Shown here: positions 1 to 34,497 of the stretch, piece after piece
Layout: each line of letters opens with the position of its first letter
Numbering within the stretch: the stretch's first letter is position 1
Assembly: GCF_044704955.1 (NCBI RefSeq)
Contig: NC_091999.1
Location: 50,096,001 to 50,160,000 of the forward strand
DNA from: Pristiophorus japonicus
Lineage: Eukaryota
Direction of reading: 5' to 3'
Length of the DNA stretch: 64,000 nucleotides
Position numbers and translations under genes: made by a program
Notes under the pieces: model-generated
Told to the model about the DNA's origin: nothing
The model's input: the letters and a program-made list of their open reading frames with translations, nothing else
The model's database searches: none

Positions 1-100
1 TGGCACAAAAACATATTTTTTCTCCAAGTGCCCCCTATAAAAATGGAGGGGGACACTAAAAGCACCGGCAATTAAAACAAATTAACTTAAAAACATAAAA

Positions 101-3100
101 TCAAATTAAAATTTGGTTGCCGGGCGTGATAATGCACTCCAGTCCCTCCGGTGCCCACCTCTTGCGGAAAGCCGCGACCGTACCGGTGGACACCGCGTGC
201 TCCATCTCCAAGGATACCCTGGACCGGATGTATACGCGGAAGAGAGGCAGGCAGTCTGGCTGAACGACCCGCTCGACCGCCCGCTGCCTGGACCGGATGA
301 TGGCCCCCTTGGCCGTGCCCAGGAGCAGTCCTTCGAGGAGGCCCTCGGACCTACCCGCTCCCCTCCGCATAGGGTGCCCGAAGATCAGGAGTGTGGGACT
401 GAAGTGCAGCCAGAATTTCAGTAGCAGCCCCATTAAATAACAAAACAGGGGCTGCAACCTCGTGCACTCAATAAAAACATGGAACACGGACTCTTCCAGA
501 CCGCAGAAATTGCAGGCGGCCTGGGAGCCCGTGAACCGGCTTAAAAATTTATTGCACGGCACTGCTCAGTGCACCACCTTCCAGGCCAAGTCCCCGACAA
601 ATAGTGGGAGGACCCCTGCGTAGAGTGCCCTCCATCGAGGACCCCCGCCTCCTCCGGACGGCAAGATGGTATGCCATGGCGTGTCCGGATGGCAGGCGAG
701 GATGGCAAAGTTGAGAGTGTGCAGGAGCAGCCCGTATAGGAAAACCCTCCGCGCAGAACTGAAAGGCACGGAGGGGATTTCTCCGAGTTGGCTCAAGTTG
801 TGAGGCGCCGGCCCCCGAGGGAGGTTCCGTGGTTTGGCGCCGATGAGGAATTCCGTCCGGACGGGATCTCCCCGCGTGCTTGAGCCTCCTCGATGCACCT
901 AATGGAGTCGGGGCCCAGAGCTGTTTTTAGCGACTCGATGGCATCGTCCGCGAGGCGGACGTTGGCGGAAATTAAGCGCCGCGCCAGCGTGTCTGGCGCC
1001 ATCCAGCCCGCTCCTCCGCCATCGAGCAGGTCCCTGGCCCTGGTCACCTCACCAGCCACAGCCTTCTCGTCCGACCGCCACCTAAAACCTCGGTCGTGGA
1101 GGTACGGATTCCCGAGCAGCGGCTCCTGCAGGACAGCCGCCACTCCAGTCGGTTGAGAGCTGCGCTTGGTGGAGACTTTGTTCCAGACCCTGGTGAGTTC
1201 CTTGTAAAAGACAGGCAGCTCCTGAAAGGCGGTCCTGACGCCCCCCAAGCTCACAAACAGGAGCTGAGTGTCGTAGTTGAGGCCGTGCTGCTGGCGGAAG
1301 AAGTACATCGCCAGAGCACGCCACCTAGGAGGGGGCTCGACGTAAAGTTATCTCTGCAGGGTCTGAAGATGGAAAGTCACGAGCTGGGTGCTGACGCACA
1401 CAAACGACTGACCGCCCTCCCCAAGTGGGAGACTCAAGACCGCGGCAGAGATCCAGTGCTTCCTGTTGTTCCAGAAGAAGTCCACCAGCTTCTTCTGTAT
1501 CTTGGTTAAAAACGCAGGGGGAGGGGTCAAAGTGACCAGCCGGTACCACAACATGGCGGCCACCAGCTGGTTTATGACTAGCGCTCGACCCCTGTAGGAC
1601 AGCACTCGGAGCAGTCCTGGCCAGTGCCCAAGGCGAGCGGCGACCTTGGCCTCCAGCTCCTGCCAGTTCGCCGGCCAGGGTTCCTCGTCGGGGCTAAGGT
1701 AGACTCCCAGATAGAGGAGATGGGTCGTGCTACAGGCAAAAGGCCTGAGCTCCTCCGGCAGGGAGTCCACCCGCCACTGACCCACTAGGAGTCCGGAACA
1801 TTTCTCCCAGTTGATTCTGGCGGAGGATGCGGCCGAGTAAATTTCCTGGCACTCACGCATCCTCCGCAGGTCAGCGGGATCCTCTACCGCGAGGAGCACG
1901 TCATCGGCATAAGCCGAGAGGACGACCTCCACGCCCGGCCCTTGCAGACCCAGTCGCATCAACCTCGTCCGCAGGAGGCGCAGGAAGGGCTCCACGCAGC
2001 CAGCATATAACTGGCCGGACATGGGGCATCCCTGGCGCAGCCCTCTCCCAAAGCGAAGGGGCGCTGTCAAGGACCCGTTAACCTTAATCTGACACTCCGC
2101 GGTGGCGTACAAACGTCGGATCCGGGATACGAAATTCGTCCCAAACCCGAAAGCGCGCAGAGTTCCGAACAGATAGTCGTGATCCACACTGTCGAACGCC
2201 TTCTCTTGGTCGAGGGATAGGAAGGCGACCGAAAGACCAGCCTCCTGGGAATAATGGATGAGGTCCCGGACCAGATGGATGTTATCGTGGATTGTCCGGT
2301 CCGGGACCGTGTAGGACTGGTCGGGGTGGATCATGTGGTCCAGCACGGCACCAAGGCGAGCAGACATAGCACTGGCTAAGATTTTGTAGTCCGTGCTGAG
2401 GAGGGAGACCGGGCGCCAGTTCTTAAGGAGGCGGCGATCGCCCTTCTTATGCAGCAGGACAATGACTGCCCTGCGCCAACAGAGCGGCATCTCCCCGGTC
2501 ACCAGACTTTCCCACAGGACCCACGCATAGTCGCCCCCAAGGACTTCCCAGAACGCCCTTTGGAACTCCACGGTCAGCCCGTCCAGCCCTGGGGCTTTTC
2601 CCCTCGAGAGCCGGTCGAGGGCGCCGGTCAGCTCCGCCAGGCTTAGCGGAGCTTCCAGATTTTCGGCGCCCACCGGGCCGACCTTCGGCAGGTCCTCCCA
2701 CAAAACTCTACGCGCTTCCTCGCTGGACGACTCCGGAGAGAACAGGGCCCCGTAATATTCACGGGCCCTGTTGTTGACGCCGTCCGGATCCGAGACTAGA
2801 GAACCGTCGTCGGCCAGCAGCGTCAAGAGCTGCTTATGGACACTCTGTCTTTTTTCCAGCGAGTAGAAGAAGGGGGAGCCGCGGTCCAGATCCCACAGGA
2901 ACCGGATCCGCGACCTCACGAACGCGCCTCGGGACCGGGCGAGCTGCAGGTCCTTCAGCGTGGCCTTATTCGCTTCGTACACCGTCCGCAGGGCCGGGTC
3001 CCCGATGACTTCACCGAGATGGGATTCCAGGTCGAGCACCTCTTTTTCTAGGCGCCCGACCCTTGCCGCCCGCCTCTTGGTCGACCCCCTCGCGTACTAT

Positions 3101-3984
3101 TGACAGAAGATGTGGACGTGAGCCTTGCCAACATCCCACCATAGCCTCAAGGAGGGGAAGCCCCCCTGCTTCCTTCTCCAGTCGGCCCAGAAATGACGGA
3201 ACGAGTCCTGGAACCGTACATCTTCCAGCAGCCGGTTGTTAAAATGCCAGTACGTGGACCCCGTCCTCGCGCGGAGTGAAGCGAGCTCCGCCCACACCAG
3301 ATGGTGGTCCGAACACGGCACCGGTCGCATGGAGGCCGCCGGGACGCAGGAAACGTACGCCCGAGACACGTAAAGGCGGTCGACTCTGGACCATCCTACT
3401 CCAGGCCTCACCCAAGTAAAGTAGCTGGAGTCGGGACGGAGATTTCGCCAGACGTCCACCAAGTCGAAGGACCCGACCAGGTCCCTCAACTTCTCCATCG
3501 CCGTCATGCTCTGCGGGGCACCGGAGCGGTCCCTCGCCTCGAGGGTGCAGTTAAAATTCCCCCCGAGGATAATGCTGTCGCCGACGTCGACGGAGCCAAG
3601 AAGAGCGGACACCTCTTCGAAGAAGCGCGTTTGCTGCGAGCCGGGCTGAGGGGCATACACGTTCACGAGATGGAGCGGCACGTCCCCCAGGCGAACCGTT
3701 ACGTGAAGCAAGCGGCCTGGCACAGGCTCCTCGAACCCCAAGATCTCCGGCTGAAAATGCGGGGCCAGCAAGATGGCCACCCCACTAGAAGTGGCGGTGA
3801 AGTGGCTCATGCGGACCTCTCCTTGCCATTCCAGGTGCCACGTGGCTTCGTCTCCCGGAACGGTGTGGGTTTCTTGCAGGAAGCACACCGCCTATTTCCC
3901 CTCCCGCAGGAGCGAAAAATTGTCAAATCAACGGCGTGCCCCTCTGCCGCCGTTGATGTTGAGGCTGGCTATGGTTATCTTCAT
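101..3984 (-). pseudogene. Tx1 copy 1 ORF2 (APE endonuclease, RT, zinc finger), disrupted
   Basis: Starts MKITIASLNING at 3984. Fragments 3097-3888, 1348-3039, 793-1308, 566-898 and 101-562 are separated by stops and frameshifts. Confidence 0.9.
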
Positions 3985-4010
3985 GGCAAAAGCATAGTGC
4001 AACCTCTACC

Positions 4011-6112
4011 TTAACCTATTGTGGTGGAGGGAGCGGAGTCTTTTGTTGAACTCCGCTCCCTCCGCAGCCCAGCGAGGGGTCCCTCGAGCTCGCGCTGCTC
4101 AAGGTGTTGCGCCTTTGTCAAGGGCCCGCCCGCGGCCAAGGTTTTGACGGTGGCGCGGACGGACCGCTTGATCAGCTCTGGCTCGGACCATTTTTCCAGG
4201 GCCAGTCGGGTTTGGTTGCAGCGACCCCGGCTCTGGGCCAAAAAGTCCCGTAGTTCCTTTGCAGGAATGAGGAGGGTCTCAGCGGCGGTCGCGAGCAGAT
4301 CCACCGCCTCACTGGCGGTGGTCTCCAGATCTTCTCCTGCGTCCCCCACCGAGTCCCCATGCTCCTCCGGGAGGTGGCCGCCAGCAGCCGGCCCATCGAC
4401 CGCACAAAGTACGACAAATGACCCGGCCGCTCCAACCGGCCCTGGCTCTGCCCCGATCGCACCCTCAGGATCGTCGGCAGAGGCGTCCCCACTGGGCTCT
4501 TTTAAAAATGGTGCTGGGTCGGGAAACGACAGCGGAAGGGGATCCCCCTCCGCCCCAGGAACCGGGGAACAAGAAGAGACCCGGCCATAGGAAATCCCCA
4601 GGCCCTCCAAGTGCCCCAGCTCCAAAGTAGGAGGCGAGGGTGGGTGTTCCTCCCCCTCCCCGCTGCCAACCCCGGCCCAGCATTTACAGTTTCATTAAAA
4701 TTATGGGTTTCGGTTTCTGCCGGGTCGAGCAAATCCCGGGGGAAGGTGGTTAATAGCTGGGCGGGCTCAGGTTCGGCCTTTTCGGCCCCGCCCGCCTCAG
4801 TCCCCGGGACGCCCGGCCCGGCGTCAAAGCATTCGTCCGCTGGCCCCACGCTCCCCACGACAGGCAGATCTTCCACGCCATCCCCGGGAGGCAGAGGCTG
4901 GCCAGCCTCGACTGTCTCTCCCTCCCCGGGGCAGACTCCTCCCGCCTACGGCGCAGCTTGGGGGCGCTGGTGGGGGACGCGGGACACGCGGCGGCCACCG
5001 ACTCCTCCACAAAGGGATGTTGTTCCCCCTCCGCCTCATCGGAGCGGCACCTCCTTTTGTTCCTGGTGATGCGCGGAGGCAGGGAGACCTCCATGTCTGC
5101 CGAGGCCTCCCGCTCCACCCCTCCCCCTTTTTCTTCTCTTGCCCGCGCCCGTGCCCCTCTGTGATATTGGTCAAGGGATCGGGCACGGGCTCAGGGCACC
5201 CCGCGCTCGCCGGTGACTGGGTTGGGCCGAGCGCGGTGGTCAAGCTTTCCGGCGCACTGAGGGAACCCGCCTCTGGATGTTTCGCCTTGATCCGCGCCTT
5301 CTTTCCGATCGGACGCTTTCCCACCCCCCCGCCGGAGGCCATGAAAACCACGGCCTCCGACGATGCCCGCGCACCTACGGCTCCCGGCACGCGGACGCAA
5401 CTAGGGGGAGGGGTGGCGGCGGCGCCAGCATTGGCCACCTTCGGTGGTTTGGCGGCCTTGGAGGCGGGGCAGTTCTTACGAACATGCCCCACCTCCCTAC
5501 AGGCATGGCACCGCATGCCGTCCGACGTCCAGAAGACGCGGTAGGCAGTCCCCTCGTGCACCACATTAAAATACCCCTCCGTCGTCTCCTCCCGCGCCAG
5601 CCGGACAAAGAGCTGGCGGCGGAAGGAGAAGACATGGCGCAGGCTGTTCTCCCGGAGGCCGAGCGGTATGGGGTTGATCCCCGACCTTACCTCCCCCAGT
5701 TGGTGCAGGTGAGGGAGGGGGAGCTCTGCGGGAACAAAGGGCGGGACGTTAGATATGATGACCCTCTGCGCGGTGGCCTCGAGAGGGTCCACCGGCAGGA
5801 ACGTCCCGCCCACCTTGAGCCCCTTTTCAAGGGCCAGGGACACCGCCCGCTCCGACCCCAGGATAACACAGCCTTCCCAGACATCTTGGAGGCTGCGACA
5901 ATGGCCGAGGGGCCGACTACCCCAGCCATCGCCCGCACGCACTCCTCGATGCTCATTGTGGGGTGAGTGTAGCTCTTGACCCCGTGTTTCTTTGTAATAA
6001 GTGTGAAAGGTGGCAAGGCAGCGGGTGGCGCAGGAGGTGCCGTGGAAGCGGTTGCCACCTGCGCATATGTCTTCACTGGCCCTGCCACCGGCGTGGATGG
6101 GGTCGCCATCAC
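4011..6112 (-). pseudogene. Tx1 copy 1 ORF1 (gag-like nucleic-acid-binding protein), frameshifted
   Basis: Starts MMATPSTPVAGP; contains VIISNVPPFVP and a CCHC knuckle; fragments 5687-6112, 4824-5942, 4502-4876 and 4011-4625. Confidence 0.88.
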
Positions 6113-7029
6113 GGGGTCCCTTTAAGGGCTACACCCACCCCAAAGTCACAAGCCTCAATGGTTTTAATTGGCCTCGTATGTAAAGACTGAGCAGAGGAGC
6201 TCTTAACGAGGCACACCTCTCCCCTAGTTGGCAATTGGGGAGGGGCCTTGCTCCCTCTGCTCAGTTGTGTTATTTTTTTGGTTTTTTTTTTAATTTGGAG
6301 GAAAGGGCTCTCAGAGAGAGAGGGGAGAGACAGAGAGAGAGCGATAGATAAAGGGGGTGCGGGAAAGAGGGAGGCTGCGAGGGCAGGTCTCCCCTCACAG
6401 CAATGGCTGGGTGCACTCCCCAAATGGCAAAAAAAACAAAAACTCAATCTTTGGGGTAGTCTTCGGGTGGGGGGAGAAGATGTCTTCACCTGGGGCAGCT
6501 AGAGCCAACCAGGCACACACTCCCAACGATGTTTAACGGGTGATTGAAAGAATCTTCAGCCTGGTAGCTCCAGCTATCCCAGGCTAGGCAATGGCGGGGG
6601 GGGGGGGGGTTCAATTGTGTGTGGGGCCTAGTTGTAAGCAAGGCCCCCACACACATTTACACACACACACACACCCCGCGATGTTCCGGCCCTCAGTGGT
6701 CTTCTTTCCTCCCCCCACCGATACAACAAAGTCTTTTAGGGAAATGCACCCACACCCAACTGTAGAATGGTAGAGTCTCACTCCTTCCACACTGGATGTT
6801 GTTGTTGGTCTTTCCCCCTCTCTCCAACACTTTGTAGAAATGGTCAAGTTGTTCAAAGTTTTCTGCTTTCCTCCTCTCCCTCTGGGTGAAAGTTGGTGGT
6901 GAAGCCCCTTCATTCCTTGTCTTCCTGGGCTGATTCACAGGCCCAGCCAGGAGCTGCAACAGCATCTGCTCTCCTCACTGCTCACTCAGCCAACTGAGCA
7001 GGACACGCCTCCACTGCTCCACGATTGGT

Positions 7030-7047
7030 TTATTGTGTATGAAACAC
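7030..7047 (+). repeat. Junction copy of the CR1 target sequence (putative target-site duplication) between Tx1 copies 1 and 2
   Basis: TTATTGTGTATGAAACAC, 15/18 match to CR1 TCCTTGTGCATGAAACAC, directly after the Tx1 5' terminus CTCCACGATTGGT. Confidence 0.75.
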
Positions 7048-7224
7048 TTTTAGCGAGTTAACGGAAAAACATTAAACCGTGCCCCCCGATCTGGGGGAAA
7101 CACCAACATTTACAATGCCTTTTTTTTTTGGCACAGATAGGAATTTTTCTCCAAGTGCCCCCTATAAAAGGGAAGGGGGACACTAAAATCACCGGCAATT
7201 AAAACAAATTAAACTTTAAAACGT

Positions 7225-10200
7225 ACCTACCCGCTCCCCTCCGCACAGGGTGCCCAAAGATCAGGAGAGTGGGAGTGAAGTGCAGCCAGAATTTCAGGAG
7301 CAGCCCCTTCAAATAATGGAACAGGGGCTACAACCTCGTGCACTCAATAAAAACATGGAACACGGACTCCTCCAGACCGCAGAAATTGCAGGCGGCCTGG
7401 GAGTCCGTGAACCGGCTTAAAAATTTGTTGCACGGCACTGCTCCATGCACCACCCTCCAGGACAAGTCCCCGATTAATAGTGGGAGGACCCCTGCGTAGA
7501 GTGCCCTCCTTCGGGGACCCCCGCCTCCTCCGGACGGCAAGATGGTACGCCATGGCATTTCCGGACGGCAGGCGAGGATGGCAAAGTTGAGAGTGTGCAG
7601 GAGCAGCCCGTACAGGAAACCCCTCCGCGTGGAACTGAAAGGCACGGAGGGGATTTCCCCGAGGCGGCTCAAGTTGTGAGGCGCCGGCCCCCGAGGGAGG
7701 TTCCGGGGTTTGGCGCCGATGAGGAAATCCGTCCGGACGGGGTTCAGTTCGGACGGGATCTCCCCACGTGCTTGAGCCTCCCCGATGGACTTAACGGAGT
7801 CAGGGCCCAGAGCTGTTTTTAGCGACTCGATGGCAACGACCGCGTGGCGGACGTTGGCAGAATTTAGGCACCGCGACAGCGTGTCTGGCGCCATCCAGCC
7901 CGCTCCTCCGCCATCGATCAGGTCCCTGACCCTGGTCACCTCACCAGCCACAGCCTTCTCGTCCGACCGCCACAAAAAACCTCGGTCGTGGAGGTACGGA
8001 TTCCCGAGCAGTGGCTCCTGCAGGACGGCCGCCACTCCAGCCGGCGGAGAGCTGCACTTGGTGGAGACTTTGTTCCAGACCCTGATGAGTTCCTTGTAAA
8101 AGACAGCTAGCTCCCGGAGGGCGGTCCTGACGCCCCCCACACTCACAAACAGGAGCTGCGTGTCGTAGTTGAGGCCGTGCTGCTGGCGGAAGAAATACGT
8201 CGCCAGAGCACGCCACCTAGGAGGGGGCTCGACGTAAAGGTATCTCTGCAGGGTCTGAAGACGGAGAGTCGTGAGCTGGGTGCTGACGCACACCAACGAC
8301 TGACCGCCCTCCCCAAGCGGGAGCCTCAGTACCGCGGCAGAGACCCAGTGCTTCCTGTTGTTCGAGAAGAAGTCCACCAGCTTCTTCTGTATCTTGGCGA
8401 CAAACGCAGGGGGAGGGGTCAAAGTGACCAGCCGGTACCACAACATGGCGGCCACCAGCTGCTTTATGACTAGCGCTCGACCCCTGTAGGACAGCACTCG
8501 GAGCAGTCCTGTCCAGCGCCCTAGGCGAGCGGCGAACTTGGCCTCCAGCTCCTGCCAGTTCGTCGGCCAGGCTCGCTCGTCGGGGCTAAGGTAGACTCCC
8601 AGATAGAGGAGATGGGTCGTGCTCCAGGCAAAAGGCCTGAGCTCCTCCGGCAGGGAGTCCAACTGCCACTGACCCACCAGGAGTCCGGAACATATTTCCC
8701 AGTTGATTCTGGCGGAGGACGCGGCCGAGTAAATCTCCTGGCACTCACGCATCCTCCGCAGGTCAGCGGGATACTCTACCGCGAGGAGCACGTCATCGGC
8801 GCAAGCCGAGAGGACGACCTCCACGCCCGGCCCTTGCAGAGCCAGTCCCGTCAACCTCGTCCGCAAGAGGCGCAGGAAAGGTTCCACGCAAACGGCGTAT
8901 AACTGGCCGGACATGGGGCATCCCTGGCGCACCCCTCTCCTAAAGCGAAGGGGCGCCGTCAAGGACCCGATAACCTTAATCAGACACTCCGCGGCGGCGT
9001 ACAAAAGTCAGATCCGGGCGACGAAGTGCGTCCCGAACCCGAAAGCGCGCAGAGTTCCGAGCAGATAGTCGTGATCCACCCTGTCGAACACCTTCTCTTG
9101 GTCGAGGGATAGGAAGGCGACCGACAGACCAGCCTCCTGGGAATAATGGATGAGGTCCCGGACGAGATGGATGTTATCGTGGATTGTCCGGCCCGGGACC
9201 GTGTAGGACTGGTCGGGGTGGATCATGTGGTCCAGCACGGCACCAAGGCGAGCAGACATCGCCCTGGCGAAGATTTTGTAGTCCGTGCTGAGGAGGGAGA
9301 CCGGGCGCCAGTTCTTAAGGAGGCGGAGATCGCCCTTCTTAGGCAGCAGAACGATGACTACCCTGCACCAAGAGAGGGGCATCTCCCCGGTCGCTAGACT
9401 TTCCCACAGGACCCGCGCGTATTCGCGCCCCAGGACGTCCCAGAACGCCCTGTGGAACTCCATGGTCAGCCCGTCCAGCCCCGGGGATTTTCCCCTCGAG
9501 AGCCGGTCGAGGGCACCGGTCAGCTCCGCCAAGCTTAGCGGAGCTTCCAGATTTTCGTCGCGCTCCGGGCTGACCTTCGGCAGGTCCTCCCACAAAACTC
9601 GGCGCGCTTCCTCGCTGGACGGATCCGGAGAGAACAGTCCCCGTAATATTCACGGGCCCTGTTGTTGACGCCCTCCGGATCCGAGGCGAGAGAGCCGTCG
9701 TCGGCCAGCAGCGTCAAGAGCTGCTTACGGACACTCTGCCGTTTTTCCAGCGAGTAGAAGAAGGGGGAGCCACGGTCCAGATCCCGCAGGAACCGGATCC
9801 GCGACCTCACGAACGCGCCTCGGGACCCGACGGGCTGCAGGTCCTTCAGCGCGGCCTTCTTCGCTTCGTACACCGTCCGCAGGGCCGGGTCCCCAACGAC
9901 TTGACCGAGACGGGATTCCAGGTCGAGCACCTCTTTTTCTAGGCGCCCGACCCTGGCCGCCCGCCTCTTGGTCGACCCCCTTGATAGAAGACGCGGTCGT
10001 GAGCCTTGCCCACGTCCCACCATAGCCTCAAGGAGGGGAAGCCCCCCTGCTTCGTTCTCCAGTCGGACCAGAATCGACGGAACGAGTCCTGGAACCGCAC
10101 GTCCTCCAGCAGCCGGTTGTTAAAGTGCTAGTACACGGACCCCGTCCTCGCGCGGAGCGAAGCGAGCTCCGCCCACACCAGGTGGTGGTCCGAACATTGC

Positions 10201-10855: not shown

Positions 10856-10885
10856 GACAAGAGCATAGTGCAACCTCTACCTAAC

Positions 10886-14137: not shown

Positions 14138-17100
14138 TCAAATTAAAATTTGTTTGCCAGGCGTGATGATGCACTCCAGTCCCTCCAGTCCCCACCTCTC
14201 GTGGAAGGCCGCGAGCGTACCGGTGGACACCGCGTGCTCCATCTCCAAGGACACCCTGGACCGGATGTAAGAGCGGAAGAGAGGCAGGCAGTCAGGTTGA
14301 ACGACCCCCTCGACCGCCCGCTGCCTGGACCGGCTGATGGCACCCTTGGCCGTGCCCAGGAGCAGTCCTACGAGGAGGCCCTCGGACCTACCCGCTCCCC
14401 TCCGCACAGGGTGCCCAAAGATCAGGAGAGTGGGACTGAAGTGCAGCCAGAATTTCAGGAGCAGCCCCTTCAGATAATGAAACAGGGGCTGCAACCTCGT
14501 GCACTCAGTAAAAACATGGAACACGGACTCCTCCAGATCGCAGAATTTGCAGGCGGCCTGGGAGTCCGTGAACCGGCTTAAAAATTTATTGCACGGCACT
14601 GCTCCGTGCAATACCCTCCAGGCCAAGTCCCCGATGAAAAGTAGGAGGCCTCCTGCATAGAGTGCCCTCCATCGGGGACCCCCGCCTCCTCCGGACGGCA
14701 AGATGGTACGCCATGGCGTGTACGGACGGCAGGCGAGGATGGCAAAGTTGAGAGTGTGCAGGAGCAGCCCGGACAGGAAAACCCTCCGCGCGGAACTGAA
14801 AGGCACGGAGGGGATTTCCTCGAGGCGGCTCAAGTTGTGCGGCGCTGGCTCCCCAGAGAGGTTCCGGGGTTTGGCGCCGATGAGGAATTCTGTCCGGACG
14901 GGGGTCAGTTCGGACGTGATCTCCCCACGTGCTTGAGCCTCCTCGATGCACCTAACAGAGTCAGTGCCCAAAGCTGTTTTTAGCGACTCGATGGCATCGG
15001 CCTGCGCGGCAGACGTCGGCTGAATTTAGGCGCCGCGCCAGCGTGCCTGGCGCCATCCAGCCCGCTCCTCCGCCATCGAGCAAGTCCCTGACCCTGGTCA
15101 CCTCACCAGCCACAGCCCTCTCTTCCGACCACCACATAAAACCTCGGTCGTGGAGGTACGGATTCCCGAGCAACGGCTCGTGCAGGACAGCCGCCACTCC
15201 AGCCGGTGGAGAGCTGCGCTTGGTGGAGACTTTATTCCAGACCCTGATGAGTTCCTTGTAAAAGACAGGCAGCTCATGGAGGGCGGTCCTGACACCCCCC
15301 AAGTTCACAAACAGGAGCTGCGTGTCGTAATTGAGGTCGCGCTGCTGGCGGAAAAAATACGTCGCCAGAGCACACCACCTAGGAGGGGGCTCGACGTAAA
15401 GGTATCTCTGCAGGGTCTGAAGACGGAAAGTCGCGAGCTGGGTGCTGACGCACACCAACGACTGACCGCCCTCCTCAAGCGGGAGACTCAAGACCGCGGC
15501 AGAGACCCAGTTCTTCTTGTTGTTCCAGAAGAAGTCCACCAGCTTTTTCTGTATCTTGGCGACAAAGGCAGGGGGAGGGGTCAAAGTGTCCAGCCATTAC
15601 CACAACATTGCGGCCACCAGCTGGTTTATGACTAGCGCTCGACCCCTGTAGGACAGCACTCGGAGCAGTCCTGTCCAGTGAACTGGGCGAGCGGCGACCT
15701 TGGCCTCCAGCTCCTGCCAGTTCGCCGGCCAGGCTCCCTCGTCGGGGCTAAGGTAGACTCCCAGATAGAGGAGATGAGTCGTGCTCCAGACAAAAGGCCT
15801 GAGCTCCTCCGGCAGGGAGTCCACCCGCCACTGACCCACCAGGAGTCCGGAACATTTCTCCCAGTTGATCCTGGCGGAGGACGCGGCCGAGTAAATCTCC
15901 TGGCACTCACGCATCGTCCGCAGGTCAGCGGGATCCTCTACCGCGATGAGCACGTCATCGGCGTAAGCCGAGAGGACGACCTCCACGCCCGGCCCTTGCA
16001 GAGCCAGTCCCGTCAACCTCGTCCGCAAGAGGCGCAGGAAAGGCTCCACGCAAACGGCGTATAACTGGCCGGACATGGGGCATCCCTGGCGCACCCCTCT
16101 CCTAAAGCGAAGGGGTGCCGTCAAGGACCCGTTAACCTTAATCAGACACTCCGCGGCAGCGTACAAAAGTCGGATCCGGGCGACGAAATGCGTCCCGACC
16201 CCGAAAGCGCAGAGTTCCGAGCATATAGTCGTGATCCACCCTGTCGAACGCCTTCTCTTGGTCGAGAGATAAGAAGGCGACTGACAGACCAGCCTCCTGG
16301 GAAAGATGGATGAGGTCCCGGACCAGATGGATGTTGTCGTGGATTGTCCGGCCTGGGACCGTGTAGGACTGGTGGGGGTGGATAATGTGGTCCAGCACGG
16401 CACCAAGGCGAGCAGACATCGCCCTGGCGAAGATTTTGTAGTCCGTGCTGAGGTGGGAGACCGGGCGCCAATTCTTAAGGAGGCAGAGATCGCCCTTCTT
16501 AGGCAGCAGGACGATGATTGCCCTGCGCCAAGAGAGGGGCATCTCCCCGGTCGCCAGACTTTCCCCCAGGACCCGCACGTAGTCGCCCCCCCGGACGTCC
16601 CAGAACGCCCTGTGGAACTCCACGGTCAGCCCGTCCAGCCCCGGGGATTTTCCCCTCGAGAGCCGGGCGAGGGCACCGGTCAGCTCCGCCAGGCTTAGCG
16701 GAGCTTCCAGATTTTCGGCGCCCTCCAGGTTGACCTTCGACAGGTCCTCCCACAAAACTCTACGCGCTTCCTCGCTGGATGGATCCGGAGAGAACAGAGC
16801 CCCATAATATTCACGGGCCCTGTTGTTGACGCCCTCCGGATCCGAGGCGAGAGAGCCGTCGTCGGCCAGCAGCGTCAAGAGCTGCTTACGGACACACTGC
16901 CTTTTTTTCCAGCGAGTAGAAGAAGGGGGAGCCGCGGTCCAGATCCCGCAGGAACCGGATCCGCGACCTCACGAACGCGCCTCAGGACCCGACGAGCTGC
17001 AGGTCATTCAGCGCGGCCTTCTTCGCTTCGTACACCGTCCGCAGGGCCGGGTCCTAGACGACTTCACCGAGACGGGATTCCAGGTCGAGCACCTCTTTTT

Positions 17101-18026
17101 CTAGGCGCCCGACCCTGGCAGCCCGCCTCTTGGTCGACCCCCTCGCATACTCTTGACAGAAGACGTGGACGTGAGCCTTGCCCACGTCCCACCATAGCCT
17201 CAAGGAGGGGAAGCCCCCCTGCTTCCTTCTCCAGTCGGACCAGAATCGACGGAACGTGTCCTGGAACCGCACGTCCTCCAGCAGCCGGTTGTTAAATTGC
17301 CAGTACGCGGACCCCGTCCTCGCGCGGAGCGAAGCGAGCTCCGCCCACACCGGGTGGTGGTCCGAACACGGCACCGGCCGCATGGAGGCCGCCGGGACGC
17401 AAGAAACGTACGCCCGAGACACGTAAAGGAGGTCGACTCTGGACCATCCAACTCCAGGCCTCACCCAAGTAAAGGCGCTGGAGTCGGGGTGGAGATTTCG
17501 CCAGACGTCCACCAAGTCGAAGGTCCCTCAACTTTTCCATCGCCGTCATGCACTGCGGGGCACCGGAGCGGTCCCTCGCCTCGAGGGTGCAGTCAAAATC
17601 CCGCCCGAGGACAATGCAGTCGCCGACGTCGACGGAGCCAAGAAGAGCGGACACCTCTTCGAAGAAGCGCGTCTGCTGCGGGCCGGGCTGAGGGGCGTAC
17701 ACGTTCACGAGATGGAGCGGCACGTCGCCCAGGCGAACCGTTACGTGCAGCAAGCGGCCTGGCACGGGCTCCTCGACCCCCAAGATCTCCGGCTGAAAAT
17801 GCGGGCCCAGCAAGATGGCCACCCCACTAGAAGTGGCGGTGAGGTGGCTCATGTGGATCTCTCCTTGCCATTCCAGGAGCCACGTGGCTTCGTCTCCCTG
17901 AACGGTGTTGGTTTCTTGCACGAAGCACACCACATATTTCCCCTCCCGCAGGAGCGAAAAGTTGTCAAATCTACGGCGTGCCCCTCTGCCGCCGTTGATG
18001 TTGAGGCTGGCTATGGTTATCTTCAT
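14138..18026 (-). pseudogene. Tx1 copy 3 ORF2, disrupted
   Basis: Fragments 17292-18044 (APE), 16138-16878, 15597-16406 (YADD), 14961-15584 and 14138-14971 (CKFC..HVFTEC). Confidence 0.9.
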
Positions 18027-18052
18027 GGCAAAAGCATAGTGCAACCTCTACC

Positions 18053-21000
18053 TTAACCTATTGTGGTGGAGGGAGCGGAGTCTTTTGTTGAACTCCACTC
18101 CCTCCGCAGCCCAGCGAGGAGTCCCTCGAGCTCGCGCTTCTCAAGGTGTTGCATAGAAACATAGAAACATAGAAAATAGGTGCAGGACCAGGCCATTCAG
18201 CCCTTCTAGCCTGCACCGCCATTCAATGAGTTCATGGCTGAACATGAAATTTCAGTACCCCCTTCCTGCTTTCTCGCCATAACCCTTGATCCCCCGAGTA
18301 GTAAGGATTTCATCTAACTCCCTTTTCAATATATTTAGTGAATTGGCCTCAACAACTTTCTGTGGTAGAGAATTCCACAGGTTCACCACTCTCTGGGTGA
18401 AGAAGTTTCTCCTCATCTCGGTCCTAAATGGCTTACCCCTTATCCTCAGACTGTGACCCCTGGTTCTGGACTTCCCCAACTTTGGGTTCATTCTTCCTGC
18501 ATCTAACCAGACTAAACCCGTCAGAATTTTAAACGTTTCTATGAGGTCCCCTCTCATTCTTCTGAACTCCAGTGAATACAAGCCCAGTTGATCCAGTCTT
18601 TCTTGATAGGTCAGTCCCGCCATCCCGGGAATCAGTCTGGTGAATCTTCGCTGCACTCCCTCAATAGCAAGAATGTCCTTCCCCAAGTTAGGAGACCAAA
18701 ACTGTACACAATACTCCAGGTGTGGCCTCACCAAGGCCTGTACAACTGCAGCAACACCTCCCTGCCCCTGTATTCAAATCCCCTCGCTATGAAGGCCAAC
18801 ATGCCATTTGCTTTCTTAACCGCCTGCTGTACCTGCATGCTAACCTTCAATGACTGATGTACCATGACACCCAAGTCTCGTTGCACCTTCCCTTTTCCTA
18901 ATCTGTCACCATTCAGATAATAGTCTGTCTCTTTGTTTTTACCACCAAAGTGGATAACCTCACATTTATCCACATTATACTTCATCTGCCATGCATTTGC
19001 CCACTCACCTAACCTATCCAAGTCACTCTGCAGCCTAATAGCATCCTCCTCGCAGCTCACACTGCCACCCAACTTAGTGTCATCCGCAAATCTGGAGATA
19101 CTGCATTTAATCCCCTCGTCTGAATCATTAATGTACAATGTAAACAGCTGGCGTCCCAGCACAGAACCTTGCGGCACCCCACTAGTCACTGCCTGCCATT
19201 CTGAAAAGTACGCGTTTACTCCTACTCTTTGCTTCCTATCTGACAACCAGTTCTCAATCCACGTCAGCACACTACCCCCAATCCCATGTGCTTTAACTTT
19301 GCACATTAATCTCTTTTGTGGGACCTTGTCGAAAGCCTTCTGAAAGTCCAAATATACCACATCAACTGGTTCTCCTTTGTCCACTTTACTGGAAACATCC
19401 TCAAAAAATTCCAGAAGATTTGTAAGCATGATTTCCCTTTCACAAATCCATGTCACCATTTTCCAGATGCACTGCTATGACATCCTTAATAATTGATTCC
19501 ATCATTTTACCCACTACTGAGGTCAGACTGACCGGTCTATAATTCCCTGTTTTCTCTCTCCTTCCTTTTTTAAAAAGTGGGGTTACATTGGCTACCCTCC
19601 ACTCCATAGGAACTGAACAAGAATCAATGGAATGTTGGAAAATGACTGTCAATGCATCCGCTATTTCCAAGGCCACCTCCTTAAGTACTCTGGGATGCAG
19701 TCCATCAGGCCCTGGGGATTTATCGGCCTTCAATCCCATCAATTTCCCCAACACAATTTCCCGACTAATAAAGATTTCCCTCAGTTCCCCCTCCTTACTA
19801 GACCCTCTGACCCCTTTTATATCCGGAAGGTTTTTTGTATCCTCCTTAGTGAATACCGAACCAAAGTACTTGTTCAATTGGTCTGCCATTTCTTTGTTCC
19901 CCGTTATGATTCCCCTGATTCTGACTGCAGGGGACCTACGTTTGTCTTTACTAACCTTTTTCTCTTTACATACCTATAGAAACTTTTGCAATCCACCTTA
20001 ATGTTCCCTGCAAGCTTCTTCTCGTACTCTATTTTCCCTGCCCTAATCAAACCCTTTGTCCTCCTCTGCTGAGTTCTAAATTTCTCCCAATCCCCAGGTT
20101 CGCTGCTATTTCTGTCCAATTTGTATGCCACTTCCTTGGCTTTAATACTATCCCTGATTTCCCTAGATAGCCACGGTTGAGCCACCTTCCCTTTTTTATA
20201 TTTACGCCAGACAGGAATGTACAATTGTTGTAATTCATCCATGCGGTCTCTAAATGTATGCCATTGCCCATCTACAGCCATCCCCCTAAGTATCATTCGC
20301 CAATCTATCCTAGCCAATTCACGCCTCATACCTTCAAAGTTACCCTTCTTTAAGTTCTGGACCATGGTCTCTGAATTTACTGTTTCATTCTCCATCCTAA
20401 TGCAGAAATCCACCATATTATGATCACTCTTCCCCAAGGGGCCTCGCACAATGAGATTGCTAATTAATCCTCTCTCATTACACAACACCCAGTCTAAGAT
20501 GGCCTACCCCTAGTTGGTTCCTCAACATATTGGTCTAGAAAACCATCCCTTATGCACTCCAGGAAATCCTCCTCCACCGTATTGCTTCCGGTTTGGCTAG
20601 CCCAATCTATGTGCATATTAAAGTCACCCATTATAACTGCTACACCTTGATTGCATGCACCCCTAATTTCCTGTTTGATGCCCTCCCCACCATCCCTATT
20701 ACTGTTTGGAGGTCTGTACACAACTCCTACTAACGTTTTTTGCCCTTTGGTGTTCTGCAGCTCTACCCATATAGATTCCACATCATCCAAGCTAATGTCT
20801 TTCCTAACTATTGCATTAATCTCCTCTTTAACCAACAATGCTACCCCACCTCCTTTTCCTTTTATTCTATCCTTCCTGAATGTTGAATACCCCTGAATGT
20901 TGAGTTCCCAGCCCTGATCATCCTGGAGCCACGTCTCCGTAATCCCAATCACATCATATTTATTAACATCTATTTGCACAATTAATTCATCCACCTTATT

Positions 21001-23363
21001 GCGGATACTCCTTGCATTAAGACACAAAGCCTTCAGGCTTGTTTTTTTAACACCCTTTGTCCTTTTAGAATTTTGCTGTACAGTGGCCCTTTTTGTTCTT
21101 TGCCTTGGGTTTCTCCGCCCTCCACTTTTCCTCATCTCCTTTCTGTCTTTTGCTTTTGCCTCCTTTTTGTTTCCCTCTGTCTCACTGCATTGGTTCCCAT
21201 CCCCCTGCCATATTAGTTTAAATCCTCCCCAACAGCACTAGCAAACACTCCCCCTAGGACATTGGTTCCGGTCCTGCCCAGGTGCAGACCGTCGGGTTTG
21301 TACTGGTCCCACCTCCCCCAGAACCGGTCCCAATGCCCCAGGAATTTGAATCCCTCCCTGCTGCACCACTGCTCAAGCCTTTGTCAAGGGCCCGCCCGCG
21401 GTCACGGTTTTACCCGCGACGCGGACGGACCCCTTGATCGCTCTGGCTCGTACCATTTTTCCAGGGCCAGTCGGGCTTGGTTGCAGCAACCCCGGCTCTG
21501 GACCAAAAAGTCCCGGAGTTCCTTTGCAGGAATGAGGAGGGTCTCAGCGGAGGCCGCGAGCAGATCCACCGCCTCCCTGGCGGTGGTCTCTAAATCTTCT
21601 CTGGTGTCCCCCACCGAGTCCCCGTCCTCCGGGAGGTGGCCGCCAGCAGCCGGCCCATCGACCGCACAAGGTACGGCAAATGACCCGGCCGCTCCAACTG
21701 GCCCTTTCTCTGCCCCGATCCCACCCTCAGGATCGTCGGCAGAGGAGTCCCCACTGGGCTCTTTTAAAAATGGTGCTGGGTCGGGAAACGACAGCGGAAG
21801 GGGTTCCCCCTCCGCCCCAGGAACCGGGGAACAAGGAGGGACCCGGCCATAGGAAATCCCCAGGCCCTCCATGTGCCCCAGCTCCAAAGTAGGGGGCGAG
21901 AGTAGGTGTTCCTCGCCCCCCCCCCCGCAGCCACCCCCCGGCACAGCAAGTACAGTGTTGTTAAATTTTTGGGTTTCGGTTTCTGCCGGGTCGACCGACT
22001 CCCGGGGGAAGTTGGATAATAGCTGGGCGGGCTCAGGTTTGGCCTTTTCGGCTCCTCCCGCCTCAGTCCCCGGGATGCCCGGCCCGGCGGCAAAGCATTC
22101 CTCCGCTGGCCCCACGCCCCCCACGATGGGCAGATCTTCCACGCCATCCCCGGGAGGCAGAGGCTGGGCAGCCTCCCCGGGAACATACTCCTCCCGCCTA
22201 CGGCGCAGTTTGGGGGGGCTGGTGGGGGACGCGGGACACGCGGCGGGCACCGACTCCTCTGCGAAGGGATGTTGTTCCCCCTCCACCTCATCGGAGCGGC
22301 GCCTCCTTTTGTTCCTGGTGGTGCGCGGAGGCAGGAAGACCTCCATGTTTGCCGAGGCCTCCCGCTCCACACCCCCCTTTTTCTTCTCTTGCCCGCGCCC
22401 GTGCCCCTCTGTGATACTGGTCAAGGGCTCGGGCACGGGCTCAGGGCACCCCGCGCTCGCCGGTGACTAGGTTGGGCTGAGCGCGGTGAACAGCTTGTCT
22501 GGCGCGCTAAGGGGACCCACCTCTAGGTGTTTCGCCTTGTTCCGCGCCTTCTTTCCAGCCGGACGCTCTCCCTCCCCCCCGCCGGAGGCCGTGAAAACAA
22601 AGGCCCCCGACGATGCCCGCGCACCTACGGCTCCCGGCACGCGGACGCTACTAGGGGGAGGGGTGGCGGCGGCGCCAGCCTTGGCCGCCCTCGGTGGTTT
22701 GGCAGCTTTAGAGGCGGAGCAATTCTTGCGAACGTGTACCACCTCCCTGCAGGCATGGCACCGCACGCCGTCCGACGTGCAAAAGACGCGGTAGGCAGTC
22801 CCCTCATGCAACACATTAAAATTGCCCACTGTCGTCTCTTCCCACGCTAGCCGGACAAAGAGCTGGTGGCGGAAGGAGAACACATGGCGCAGGCTGTTCT
22901 CCCTGAGGCCAAGCGGTATGGGGTTGATCCCCGACCTTACCTCCCCCAGTTGGTGTAGGTGAGGGAGGAGGAGCTCAGCGGGAACAAAGGGCGGGACATT
23001 AGATATAATGACCCTCTGCGCGGTGGCCTCGAGAGGGTCCACCGGCAGGAACGTCCCGCCCACCGTGAGCCCCTTTTGAATGGCCAGGGACACCGCCAGC
23101 TCCGACCCCAGGAAGAACACGGCCTTCCCAGTCATCTTGGAGGCTGCGACAATGGCCGAGGGTCCGACTATCCCAGCCATCGCCCGCACGCACTCCTCGA
23201 TGCTGATTGTGGGGTGAGTGTAGCTCTTGACCCCGTGTTTCTTCGTAATAAGTGTGAAAGGTGGCAGGGCAGCGGCTGGCGCAGGAGGTGCCGTGGAAGC
23301 GGTTGCCACCTGCGCATATGTCTTCGCTGGCCCTGCCACCGGCGTGGATGGGGTCGCCATCAC
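18053..23363 (-). pseudogene. Tx1 copy 3 ORF1, split by the CR1 insertion
   Basis: Fragments 22467-23363 and 21402-22436; the last ~100 bp lie at 18053-18152. Confidence 0.85.
18153..21376 (-). mobile_element. CR1 LINE, 5'-truncated in ORF1, nested in Tx1 copy 3
   Basis: (TTTCTATG)n tail at 18153, RT (DFQKAFDKVP, GVPQGSVLG, FADD), APE (CLNARSIRNK, GITETW) and ORF1 esterase end (DGLHL). Tx1 sequence resumes at 21377. Confidence 0.93.
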
Positions 23364-24314
23364 GGGGTCCCTTTAAGGGCTACACCCACCCCAAAGTCAC
23401 AGCCCTTAATGGTCTTAATTGGCCTCGTATCTAAAGACTGAGCAGAGGAGCTCTTAACGAGGCACACCTCTCCCCTAGTTGGCAATTGGGGAGGGGCCTT
23501 GCTCCCTCTGCTCAGTTGTTTTATTTTTTGGTTTTTTATATTAAAATTAGGAGGAAAGGGCTCTCAGAGAGAGAGGGGAGAGACAGAGAGAGAGAGATAG
23601 AGTCAGGGGGTGCGGGAAAGAGGGAGGCTGCGAGGACAGGTCTCCCCTCACAGCAATGGGTGGGTGCACTCCCCAGATGGAAAAGAAAGCAAAAACACAG
23701 TCTTTGGGGTGGTCTTCGGGTTGGGAGAGAAGATGTCTTCACCTGGAGCAGCTAGAGCCAACCAGGCACACACTCCCAACGATGTTCAAAGGTGTGTTTA
23801 AACAATCTTCAGCCTGGTAGCTTCAGCTATCCCAGGCTAGGCAATGGCTGGGGGGGGGGGGGTTCAATTGTGTGTGGGGCCTAGTTGTAAGCAAGGCCCC
23901 CACGCACACTTCCACACACTCACCCCCCCCCCGCGATGTTCCGGCCCTCAGTGGTCTTCTTTCCTCCCCCCACCGATACAACAAAGTCTATTGGGGAATG
24001 CACCAAAACACACCCACTTGTCGAAGATGTAGAAATGACTCTCCCTCCTTCCACACTGGATGGGGTTCCTCAGGTTGTTCTTTCCCCCTCTCTCCAACTC
24101 TCTGTAGTTGTAATAAATGGTTAAATTGTTCAACTCTCCTCCTTTCCCTCCGGATGTTGAATGGGTAGCAAGCTAGCCCTTCCCTTCTTCTCTTCCTGGG
24201 CTGGTCTCAGGGCTCACTCCAGGCCTTCCAAACAGGAGCAAAGTTGGTAGCTGCTTCTCTCACTGCTCACACAGCCAACTGTGCAGGACACGCCTCCATT
24301 GCTCCACGATTGGT

Positions 24315-25012
24315 TCCTTGTGCATGAAGCCCAAAAAGTTAGTTTGCAGGTGCAGCAGATAATCAGGAAGGCAAATGGAATGTTGGCCTTCATTGCAAGA
24401 GGGATGGAGTACAAAAGCAGGGAGGTCCTGCTGCAACTGTATCGGGTATTGTTGAGGCCGCACCTGGAGTACTGCGTGCAATTTTGGTCACCTTACTTAA
24501 GGAAGGATATACTAGCTTCGGAGGGAGTGCAGAGACGATTCATTAGGCTGATTCCGGAGATGAGGGGTTTACCTTATGATGATAGATTGAGTAGACTGGG
24601 ACTTTTCTCGTTGGAGTTCAGAAGGATGAGGGGTGATCTTATAGAAATATTTAAAATAATGAAAGGGATAGACAAGATAGAGGCAGAGAGGTTGTTTCCA
24701 CTGGTTGGGAAGATTAGAACTAGGGGGGCACAGCCTCAAAATATGGGGGAGCCAATTTAAAACTGAGTTGAGAAGGAATTTCTTCTCCCAGCGGGTTGTG
24801 AATCTGTGGAATTCTCTGTCCAAGGAAGCAGTTGAGGCTCGCTCATTGAATGTATTCAAACCACAGATAGATAGATCTTTAACCAATAAGGGAATTAAGG
24901 GTTATGGGGAGCGGGCGGGTAAGTGGAGCTGAGTCCACGGCCAGATCAGCCATGATCTTATTGAATGGTGGAGCAGGCTCGAGAGGCCAGATGGTCTACT
25001 CCTGTTCCTAAT
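24315..25012 (+). mobile_element. CR1 LINE 3' part; host of the Tx1 array
   Basis: Begins at TCCTTGTGCATGAA and reads LVHEAQKVSLQVQQIIRKANGMLAFIARG...RPHLEYCVQFWSP through to a CR1 3'UTR. Confidence 0.92.
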
Positions 25013-34433: not shown

Positions 34434-34497
34434 GAGCTCCAGGGAACGGTTTAAAGAAACGCTGGGGGCAACAACACCGAGTGCAGCCCCGGGCTCG

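What the first reader, a model, noticed from the sequence alone, without database searches (positions are those of the whole stretch)
1..25012. Tx1-like retrotransposon that appears to target a fixed site inside CR1 LINE ORF2 and builds head-to-tail arrays there
Seen: three copies in tandem, each 5' end (CTCCACGATTGGT on +) followed by the same motif: TTATTGTGTATGAAACAC (7030), TCCTTGTGCATGAAAC (13884) and TCCTTGTGCATGAA (24315). At 24315 the motif continues as CR1 RT-coding sequence (LVHEAQKVSLQVQQ). The 13884 16-mer is also present, unoccupied, in CR1 copies at 36427 and 39329, so it is CR1 sequence. Established: the Tx1 clade includes APE-type sequence-specific families (targets include U2 snRNA, microsatellites and the Tx1D transposon) that make target-site duplications. 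Inference: this family inserts antisense into a high-copy LINE, disables its ORF2, and re-uses the duplicated site. I do not know of a described CR1-targeting Tx1 family but cannot check databases.
Basis: partly seen in the sequence, partly recalled or inferred. Interest (0 to 1): 0.92.

Follow-up and report, generated by a model that had tools for sequence, protein, structure and literature searches.

The report
LINE that homes into CR1 LINEs
Three decayed copies of an L1/Tx1-type jumping gene sit head-to-tail at one exact 16-18-letter site inside the reverse-transcriptase gene of another jumping gene (CR1), and read data show many other copies in this genome joined to the same letters, so this is a site-specific retrotransposon with a new kind of target, an extension of a habit already known for Tx1 elements.

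Summary
Window 1-24314 carries three minus-strand, head-to-tail copies (unit about 6.87 kb) of an APE+RT LINE. Each 5' end (...CTCCACGATTGGT on +) is followed by the same CR1-derived 14-18 letters. At 24315 these run on for about 700 nt as the 3' part of a CR1 ORF2. Two CR1 copies in the window carry the site unoccupied.

The three copies are not local duplicates. They are a mosaic of subfamilies, and 32 of 40 letters that differ from the family majority are private to one copy. Contigs of public runs of the same organism show a very high-copy family. 5'-truncated copies, cut at eight or more different points, all join at 13884-13887, the start of the same 16-mer.

Sequential target-primed insertion into a site that each insertion duplicates is the best reading (0.8).

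Tx1 elements are already known to target other transposons with 16-nt duplications and tandem stacking (crocodilian Tx1-Mar/SINEU-3, PMC4494074). A LINE as target was not found in the searchable literature.

This scan has noted the same thing in at least ten other windows of this genome. Two follow-ups agreed.

Verdict: a real new member of a known kind, of moderate interest.

The parts
1..7029 (-). Copy A of the Tx1-like LINE. The 5' end is at 7029; the 3' UTR is cut by the window start, so the T-run and 3' tail lie to the left. ORF1 remnants lie at about 6112-4824 and ORF2 at about 4002-98.
   Evidence: ORF2 carries in-frame stops and one frameshift (tblastn HSPs in frames -2 and -1).
3097..3888 (-). 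Apurinic/apyrimidinic-type endonuclease domain of copy A ORF2
   Evidence: PF03372, E 4e-9. Motifs QETH, NVYAP, SDHH are seen in the translation.
1348..3039 (-). Reverse-transcriptase part of copy A ORF2
   Evidence: PF00078, E 3e-37; 54-61% identity to sea-turtle proteins and 43% to fish 'Transposon TX1'; human L1 ORF2p, E 3e-51.
101..562 (-). C-terminal piece of copy A ORF2 with a CCHC-type motif (CNFCG...H....C)
   Evidence: translation; aligns to the C-termini of Tx1-like proteins. There was no Pfam hit at E<=0.01.
4824..5942 (-). ORF1 remnant of copy A with a zinc knuckle (CHACREVGHVRKNC)
   Evidence: zf-CCHC E 0.003, 17.9 bits, below the Pfam cut-off of 20.8.
7030..7047 (+). CR1-derived 18-mer between copies A and B (TTATTGTGTATGAAACAC; 15 of 18 letters match the CR1 site), read as a target-site duplication
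7048..13883 (-). Copy B: 3' tail 7048-7132, 3' UTR, ORF2 about 10852-7253 with several frameshifts, ORF1 region, 5' end at 13883. It has a 252-nt deletion relative to A 98-348.
13884..13899 (+). CR1-derived 16-mer between copies B and C (TCCTTGTGCATGAAAC), read as a target-site duplication
   Evidence: Joints of truncated copies land here.
13900..18152 (-). Copy C, 3' part: 3' tail 13900-13990, A-rich stretch (T-run on +) about 13975-14030, 3' UTR, and ORF2 with frameshifts
18153..21376 (-). A later insertion into copy C. It is a 3.2-kb CR1 of another subfamily with an octamer-repeat 3' end at 18153-18180. Its homologous site (18854-18877) matches the target 16-mer at 10 of 16 letters.
21377..24314 (-). 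Copy C, 5' part (ORF1 region and 5' UTR); the 5' end is at 24314
24315..25018 (+). 3' part of the targeted CR1 element. It starts with TCCTTGTGCATGAA. The ORF2 C-terminus runs 24317-24757, then the 3' UTR.
   Evidence: 62-82% identity to proteins of Callorhinchus, Chiloscyllium and unnamed contigs, and 45% to a bird protein.
36417..36446 (-). Unoccupied, perfect target site in a CR1 copy
39319..39348 (-). Unoccupied, perfect target site in a CR1 copy

Best explanation
A high-copy L1/Tx1-type LINE family (ORF1 with a CCHC knuckle; ORF2 with APE endonuclease, RT and a C-terminal zinc motif; a specific 3' tail of about 85 nt behind an A-rich stretch) integrates by target-primed reverse transcription. 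Its target is one asymmetric site in the thumb-coding part of CR1 ORF2, and it inserts antisense to CR1.

Inferred cut geometry, on the CR1 sense strand: ...GACCTGGGGG^TCCTTGTGCATGAAAC(AC)|AAAAAGTTAG. The first nick (|) gives the primer ...GAAAC(AC)-3'OH, from which the cDNA of the element's 3' tail is made. The second nick lies on the other strand 16-18 nt upstream (^). The result is a 16-18-nt target-site duplication.

Because each insertion leaves a copy of the site at both ends, later insertions land in it again and stack head-to-tail with exactly one 16-18-mer between neighbours. Here three full-length copies from different subfamilies stacked in one CR1. They then decayed to about 8-9% pairwise divergence with stops and frameshifts. 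One was later hit by a CR1 of a subfamily that lacks the site.

Shown: the anatomy, the shared junction, the unoccupied sites, the many other copies joined to the same letters, and the copies' independent histories.

Inferred: the nick positions, that the endonuclease (rather than RNA pairing) reads the site, and the order of insertion.
For: Junction letters and their continuation into CR1.

Unoccupied homologous sites.

Domains and relatives.

Other loci. Run X1 of the same organism lays 63,150 contigs on 2 kb at >=85% likeness, with more than 100 distinct contigs at single positions. 'Goes back' joints run from body positions 14162, 14263, 14335, 14413, 14785, 14843 and 14849 to 13884-13887 with 0-7 filler letters; 12 rows were shown and 27 were not. 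These are 5'-truncated copies with different truncation points, all abutting the same 16-mer. A 1-nt deletion at 13883 is seen in 38 contigs that span the 5' end/16-mer joint. A second study of the same organism (X10) shows the same features.

Independent histories. The site patterns are star-like (private changes A 274, B 319, C 224). B has a private 10.3% block in the ORF1 region, and A has a private 19.6% block in the 5' UTR. At 40 positions where the laid copy differs from the family majority, 32 changes are private to that copy.

Precedent: Tx1-Mar and SINEU-3 insert at a fixed site of Mariner-N4_AMi with a 16-nt duplication and 'tandem insertions sandwiching a TSD'. Other Tx1 families target piggyBac, Harbinger and LTR elements (PMC4494074).
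Against: All in-window evidence comes from one locus. The far end of the array, where the CR1 5' half should lie, is outside the window.

Logan contigs are short and collapse repeats, so the share of genomic copies that sit in CR1 as opposed to elsewhere was not measured. One shown joint (14890 to 13903) has 19 other letters in place of most of the 16-mer. No loose-end row at 13883 or 13900 was among those printed, and 1128 rows were not shown.

The letters just after the 14-mer differ between the flank (GAAGCCC at 24326) and the internal junctions (GAAAC, GAAACAC). This needs either later mutation or a 16-mer brought in with the RNA.

Endonuclease specificity is untested. Clade placement rests on best hits, not on a tree.
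Confidence: 0.8

Rival explanations
1. One chance insertion of the LINE into a CR1, followed by local tandem duplication. Unequal exchange or replication slippage between the two flanking target-site duplications would start it, and exchange between copies would continue it. This gives the same picture of units separated by one 16-18-mer without any site preference.
For: Unequal exchange between direct repeats yields exactly this architecture. All three copies are full-length with the same 5' end. The junction-plus-tail segments at 7030-7132 and 13884-13990 are homologous.
Against: The copies are mosaics of different subfamilies: A's 5' UTR block has 19.6% private changes and B's ORF1 block 10.3%. 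Of 40 departures from the family majority, 32 are private to one copy and only 2 are shared by all three. Elsewhere in the genome, copies truncated at many different points abut the same 16-mer, which duplication of whole units cannot produce. Duplication immediately after insertion cannot be excluded for this one array.
Confidence: 0.08
2. The element does home to the CR1 site, but the specificity lies in its RNA and not in the endonuclease. Read-through transcripts end in the 16-18 nt of target sequence downstream of the source copy. These letters pair with the nicked CR1 sense strand (...CCTTGTGCATGAAAC-3') and so select or fix insertions at that site. The endonuclease itself is only loosely specific, for example for N|AAAA as in L1.
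For: The inferred nick precedes an A-run (CAC|AAAAAG), like the L1-type preference (own knowledge). The internal 16-18-mers (GAAAC, GAAACAC) match the CR1 majority better than the local flank does (GAAGCCC), as expected if they were copied from RNA. Co-transcribed target sequence sharpens integration in R1 and R2 (cited in PMC4494074).
Against: This rests on only 2-4 letters. Target choice of APE-type LINEs is mainly set by the endonuclease in the tested cases (Takahashi and Fujiwara 2002, cited in PMC4494074).
Confidence: 0.15
3. The 16-mer is part of the element (a terminal sequence it carries everywhere), and its resemblance to CR1 and the adjacency to a CR1 fragment are coincidental. No target specificity is involved.
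For: The motif is seen after every 5' end and before every 3' tail in the window, as would hold for a terminal sequence.
Against: At 24315 the same letters continue in register into 700 nt of CR1, at exactly the homologous position of unoccupied CR1 copies. A chance match of 14-16 letters in register is about 1e-8 or less (own arithmetic).
Confidence: 0.02

Closest known systems
Tx1-Mar LINEs and SINEU-3 of crocodilians, which target the DNA transposon Mariner-N4_AMi (Kojima 2015, PMC4494074)
   Same: Tx1-type machinery inserting at a fixed position and orientation inside another abundant transposon. Both give a 16-nt target-site duplication (AGGTTCCCATCAGCAT there) and tandem insertions that sandwich one duplication, interpreted there as sequential insertion.
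   Different: There the target is a non-autonomous DNA transposon; here it is the RT-coding region of an autonomous LINE (CR1). The target sequences are unrelated. No snRNA-derived head was found at the 5' end here. The host here is probably a cartilaginous fish, inferred from the named CR1 hits.
Tx1L in Tx1D (Xenopus laevis)
   Same: The founding case of the clade: a LINE found almost only inside one site of another mobile element (cited in PMC4494074).
   Different: There the target is a piggyBac-type DNA transposon. A small duplication is reported there (own knowledge), against 16-18 nt here.
Tx1-8_Crp and Tx1-4_AMi (into LTR retrotransposons); Tx1-9_AMi (into Harbinger)
   Same: Tx1 families whose preferred targets are other transposons, retrotransposons included.
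   Different: Their targets are LTR elements or DNA transposons. No LINE target is named in that paper.
Keno, Kibi, Koshi, Mutsu and Dewa (Tx1 clade; targets are U2 snRNA, (TC)n, (TTC)n, 5S rRNA and tRNA repeats)
   Same: Sequence-specific APE-type LINEs of the same clade that use multicopy targets as a safe haven (own knowledge).
   Different: Their targets are host multicopy genes or microsatellites, not a coding region of a rival retrotransposon.
R1 and R2 of arthropod rDNA
   Same: Strict site specificity; co-transcription with the target can supply target letters at the RNA ends.
   Different: Different clades; R2 uses a restriction-like endonuclease. Their target is a host gene.

Membership tests
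Tx1 clade of the L1 group (non-LTR retrotransposons) | ORF2 with an N-terminal APE-type endonuclease followed by RT | tested here: met
   PF03372 at 3097-3888(-) and PF00078 at 1348-3039(-), in that order on the minus strand; collinear with 950-985-aa Tx1-like proteins.
Tx1 clade of the L1 group (non-LTR retrotransposons) | RT groups with Tx1 references rather than with L1 proper in a phylogeny | tested here: inconclusive
   No reference Tx1, Keno or L1 set was available for a tree. Indirect evidence: 467 bits and 43% identity to a protein named 'Transposon TX1', against 178 bits to human L1 ORF2p. The Atlas look-up gave only generic RT clusters.
Tx1 clade of the L1 group (non-LTR retrotransposons) | C-terminal cysteine-histidine motif in ORF2 | tested here: inconclusive
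   CNFCGLEESVFHVFIEC is seen directly in the 101-562(-) translation. There was no Pfam match at E<=0.01. Relatives carry PF13966.
Tx1 clade of the L1 group (non-LTR retrotransposons) | ORF1 with CCHC zinc knuckle(s) | tested here: inconclusive
   zf-CCHC scores 17.9 bits, below the cut-off of 20.8. The motif CHACREVGHVRKNC is visible.
Sequence-specific (target-specific) LINE | Independent copies share the same flanking target sequence, position and orientation | tested here: met
   copies with different 5' truncation points join at 13884-13887, and 38 or more contigs span the 5' end/16-mer joint. In the window the right flank is CR1 in register. The share of all copies at the site was not measured.
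Sequence-specific (target-specific) LINE | Empty target sites exist with the duplicated letters present once | tested here: met
   36417-36446 and 39319-39348 carry the site once, uninterrupted. These are paralogous CR1 copies, not an orthologous empty locus.
Sequence-specific (target-specific) LINE | The element's endonuclease cleaves the target sequence specifically | not testable with these tools
   This needs a biochemical nicking assay.
CR1 LINE (identity of the target) | ORF2 C-terminal region homologous to CR1 (…LYxxLVRPHLEYCVQFWSP…GLFSLExRRxRGDLI…) | tested here: met
   translation; 469 homologues, the named ones from Callorhinchus, Chiloscyllium and a bird. The match of this motif to chicken CR1 rests on my own knowledge.
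CR1 LINE (identity of the target) | 3' end with short octamer-type repeats | tested here: inconclusive
   Seen for the CR1 nested in copy C (18153-18180). The 3' end of the targeted copy near 25012-25018 was not analysed for it.

The most novel reading that the evidence does not exclude
The family is a dedicated parasite of a LINE. Its APE-type endonuclease would read 16 or more base pairs of CR1 RT-coding sequence, making it the first LINE known to home into another LINE's gene. It has tracked the CR1 subfamilies that keep the site, while CR1 subfamilies with a changed site (such as the one nested at 18153-21376) escape it. That would be an arms race between two retrotransposons inside one genome, and a natural long-site APE nuclease of interest for targeted integration.
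Probability: 0.35. Interest if true: 0.7.

Novelty: new member of a known kind. Interest (0 to 1): 0.55.

Why it matters
Site-specific LINEs show how a small APE-type nuclease can be turned into a long-site homing enzyme, and how mobile elements limit the harm they do by landing in expendable repeats.

A family that aims at the coding sequence of another, far more abundant LINE adds a new target class to the Tx1 repertoire, which so far covers DNA transposons, LTR elements, small-RNA genes and microsatellites.

It also gives a system with thousands of natural insertion events and thousands of empty sites in one genome. That allows target rules, array growth and possible escape by CR1 subfamilies to be read directly from sequence.

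For annotation, it explains recurrent arrays of about 6.9 kb units and split CR1 copies in this genome.

Tried and rejected
(1) Independent loci through public collections. A scan of metagenome contigs with the conserved 19-mer of the 3' tail gave 6 loci, all unrelated chance matches with no similarity to the window.

So whether turtle relatives also sit in CR1 was not tested.

(3) The ESM Atlas look-up of the RT gave only generic RT clusters and was of no use for clade placement.

(4) RNA-gene-derived heads, as in some Tx1-Mar families, were not found. Rfam gave none at gathering score over the whole window and only noise at E<=1 over 13000-14150. No tRNA was found.

(5) Folding the 85-91-nt 3' tails gave no better than shuffles (z -0.66 and -0.60), so no stem-loop is claimed.

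(6) The sigma-70 promoter and terminator scan does not apply to a vertebrate element and is ignored.

(7) A similarity between this target and the Tx1-Mar duplication AGGTTCCCATCAGCAT was checked by eye. It gave about 8 of 16 matches and was rejected as chance.

(8) An assembly artefact was rejected, because the copies differ by 8-9% and by indels.

The copies were only compared.

Full report
**What is there**

CTCCACGATTGGT occurs at 7017, 13871 and 24302 on the + strand only. It is followed by TTATTGTGTATGAAACAC, TCCTTGTGCATGAAAC and TCCTTGTGCATGAA respectively. The 16-mer recurs only on the minus strand, at 36427 and 39329.

Self-comparison resolves three head-to-tail units of about 6.87 kb:
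- A is 1-7029.
- B is 7048-13883.
- C is 13900-24314, interrupted at 18153-21376.

Pairwise identity is 90.7-92.0%.

On the minus strand each unit reads as follows:
- a 5' UTR;
- an ORF1 remnant with a CCHC knuckle;
- ORF2 with an Exo_endo_phos domain, an RVT_1 domain and a C-terminal C-x2-C-x7-H-x4-C motif;
- a 3' UTR, then an A-rich stretch, then a conserved tail of about 85 nt.

All three copies carry stops and frameshifts. B also lacks 252 nt of the ORF2 end. These are relics, not active copies.

**The flank**

From 24315 the + strand is the 3' part of a CR1-type LINE. There are 147 codons without a stop (LVHEAQKV...LEYCVQFWSP...GLFSLEFRRMRGDLI). They have 469 homologues, the named ones from Callorhinchus, Chiloscyllium and a bird. 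The host is therefore probably a cartilaginous fish; this is an inference.

The window holds four other CR1 copies that cover this position. Two carry GGGGTCCTTGTGCATGAAACACAAAAAGTT perfectly and uninterrupted, and two carry degenerate versions. The site encodes ...DLGVLVHE..., about 55 codons after the RT's ADDT motif and about 700 nt from the CR1 3' end. Even strongly 5'-truncated CR1 copies would therefore carry it.

**Junction anatomy**

On the + strand each internal junction reads: [5' end of one copy ...GATTGGT] [TCCTTGTGCATGAAAC(AC)] [reverse complement of the next copy's 3' tail, TCTTTTTGAG... or TTTTAGCGAG...]. Exactly one CR1-derived 16-18-mer separates neighbours. This is what a target-site duplication shared by stacked insertions looks like.

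The + strand order, 16-mer then tail complement, fits target-primed reverse transcription from a nick in the CR1 sense strand after GAAAC(AC) and before the A-run. A second nick would lie 16-18 nt upstream on the other strand. These nick positions are inferred.

**Is it more than one event?**

The window alone offers one locus. A single insertion followed by unequal exchange between its two duplications would give the same picture. Three results argue against that.

First, the copies are mosaics. In the ORF2 region, private change is 2.7-4.0% per copy. B has 10.3% private change across the ORF1 and inter-ORF block. A has 19.6% in the 5' UTR just inside the shared terminal 60 nt or so. That means different source subfamilies.

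Second, I took the 40 best-supported positions where the laid copy differs from nearly all other genomic copies (table 3). At 32 of them the other two window copies carry the family-majority letter, and only 2 are shared by all three. The copies therefore have no long common history after leaving the family pool.

Third, and most telling, are the contigs of public runs of the same organism laid on 12900-14900 at >=85% likeness.
- They show a very abundant family: 63,150 contigs in run X1, with more than 100 distinct contigs at single positions.
- They show 'goes back' joints in which element body positions 14162, 14263, 14335, 14413, 14785, 14843 and 14849 are followed, after 0-7 extra letters, by 13884-13887. 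Those are 5'-truncated copies, each cut at a different point, all abutting the same 16-mer next to another copy's tail.
- Variable 5' truncation with short filler is the signature of separate retrotransposition events and cannot come from duplicating whole units.
- Thirty-eight contigs also span the full-length 5' end/16-mer joint with a 1-nt deletion at 13883.
- A second study of the same organism (X10) shows the same features.

Limits of this evidence:
- Contigs are short.
- Only 12 of 39 such rows were printed.
- One printed joint (14890 to 13903) has other letters in place of most of the 16-mer.
- The share of copies lying in CR1 as opposed to elsewhere could not be measured.

**Other attempts at independent loci**

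A pattern scan of metagenome contigs returned only chance hits.

The scan's own notes list at least ten other windows of this genome with the same Tx1-in-CR1 picture. Two follow-ups reached the same reading. I treat these as leads that agree with mine, not as evidence.

**What it is**

It is an APE-type, L1-group LINE whose nearest named relatives are 'Transposon TX1' proteins (467 bits, against 178 bits to human L1 ORF2p). Its ORF1 and ORF2 zinc motifs are of the kind expected for Tx1.

A proper RT tree with reference families was not possible, so clade membership is likely rather than proven. No snRNA- or tRNA-derived head is present. The 3' tail has no fold better than shuffles.

**Comparison with what is known**

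The Tx1 clade is the classic home of sequence-specific APE-type LINEs:
- Tx1L goes into the piggyBac-type Tx1D.
- Keno goes into U2.
- Kibi and Koshi go into microsatellites.

In crocodilians:
- Tx1-Mar goes into Mariner-N4_AMi.
- Tx1-9_AMi goes into Harbinger.
- Tx1-8_Crp and Tx1-4_AMi go into LTR retrotransposons.

For the Tx1-Mar-mobilised SINEU-3, a 16-nt duplication and 'tandem insertions sandwiching a TSD' are described and read as sequential insertion (PMC4494074).

The present case has the same behaviour and even the same duplication length. The new element is the target, the RT-coding region of a CR1 LINE. Six literature searches found no Tx1 family described with a LINE target. Repbase Reports and Dfam are not in the searchable library, so prior deposition cannot be excluded.

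**Mechanistic alternative**

The letters after the 14-mer differ between the local flank (GAAGCCC) and the internal junctions (GAAAC, GAAACAC, which match the CR1 majority). This hints that the junction letters may have been copied from read-through RNA of source copies sitting in other CR1s. Pairing of those letters with the nicked strand could then contribute to, or even set, the specificity. This rests on very few letters and needs transcript data and a nicking assay.

**Verdict**

- Observation: confirmed.
- Interpretation: supported.
- Novelty: a new member (a new target class) of a known kind of site-specific LINE.
- Interest: moderate, higher if the endonuclease proves to read the long site, or if CR1 subfamilies can be shown to escape by changing it. 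The CR1 nested at 18153-21376 matches the site at only 10 of 16 letters.

Noticed in passing
window 18153-21376 (-): Reciprocal nesting. A 3.2-kb CR1 of another subfamily (APE and RT readable, octamer-repeat 3' end at 18153-18180) has inserted into copy C of the Tx1-like element. Its homologous site (DLGVMVHQ, 18854-18877) matches the Tx1 target 16-mer at only 10 of 16 letters.
   Followed up: partly
window 6810-7029 versus 13649-13883 and 24080-24314; 11209-12700: The three copies are mosaics. A has a different 5' UTR block (19.6% private change), yet all three share the terminal 60 nt or so. B has a divergent ORF1 and inter-ORF block (10.3% private change). The conserved 5' terminus across subfamilies, and its higher contig depth, suggest a functional 5' end.
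   Followed up: partly
window 7222-7235 (copy B) versus 98-348 (A) and 14134-14385 (C): Copy B has a clean 252-nt deletion that removes the ORF2 C-terminus and part of the 3' UTR.
   Followed up: no
Read-laying runs X5 (organism B) and X9 (organism C) on window 14085-14752 and 14147-14423: Two other organisms hold contigs 96.7% (668 nt) and about 98% (277 nt) identical to copy C's ORF2 3' end. This is closer than the window's copies are to each other. Only about 10 contigs per run were laid. They may be close relatives with few copies or low coverage, or there may be carry-over between samples; this was not resolved.
   Followed up: no
window 25028-29483 and 60048-63997: Direct segmental duplicate of about 4.4 kb at 89-94% identity, starting right after the targeted CR1. 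It contains 54-mer, 34-mer and 162-mer tandem repeats.
   Followed up: no
window 53535-54812; 48295-49165; 34497-34839: Three satellites. A 54-nt unit occurs in 23.7 copies; the same unit appears inverted at 29351-29641 and 63866-63994. A 46-nt unit occurs in 19 copies and a 41-nt unit in 8.7 copies.
   Followed up: no
window 41098-41705 (+): C2H2 zinc-finger array (84-nt period, 191-aa ORF at 41130-41705). Related fragments lie inverted at 52721-52937 and 61149-61502.
   Followed up: no
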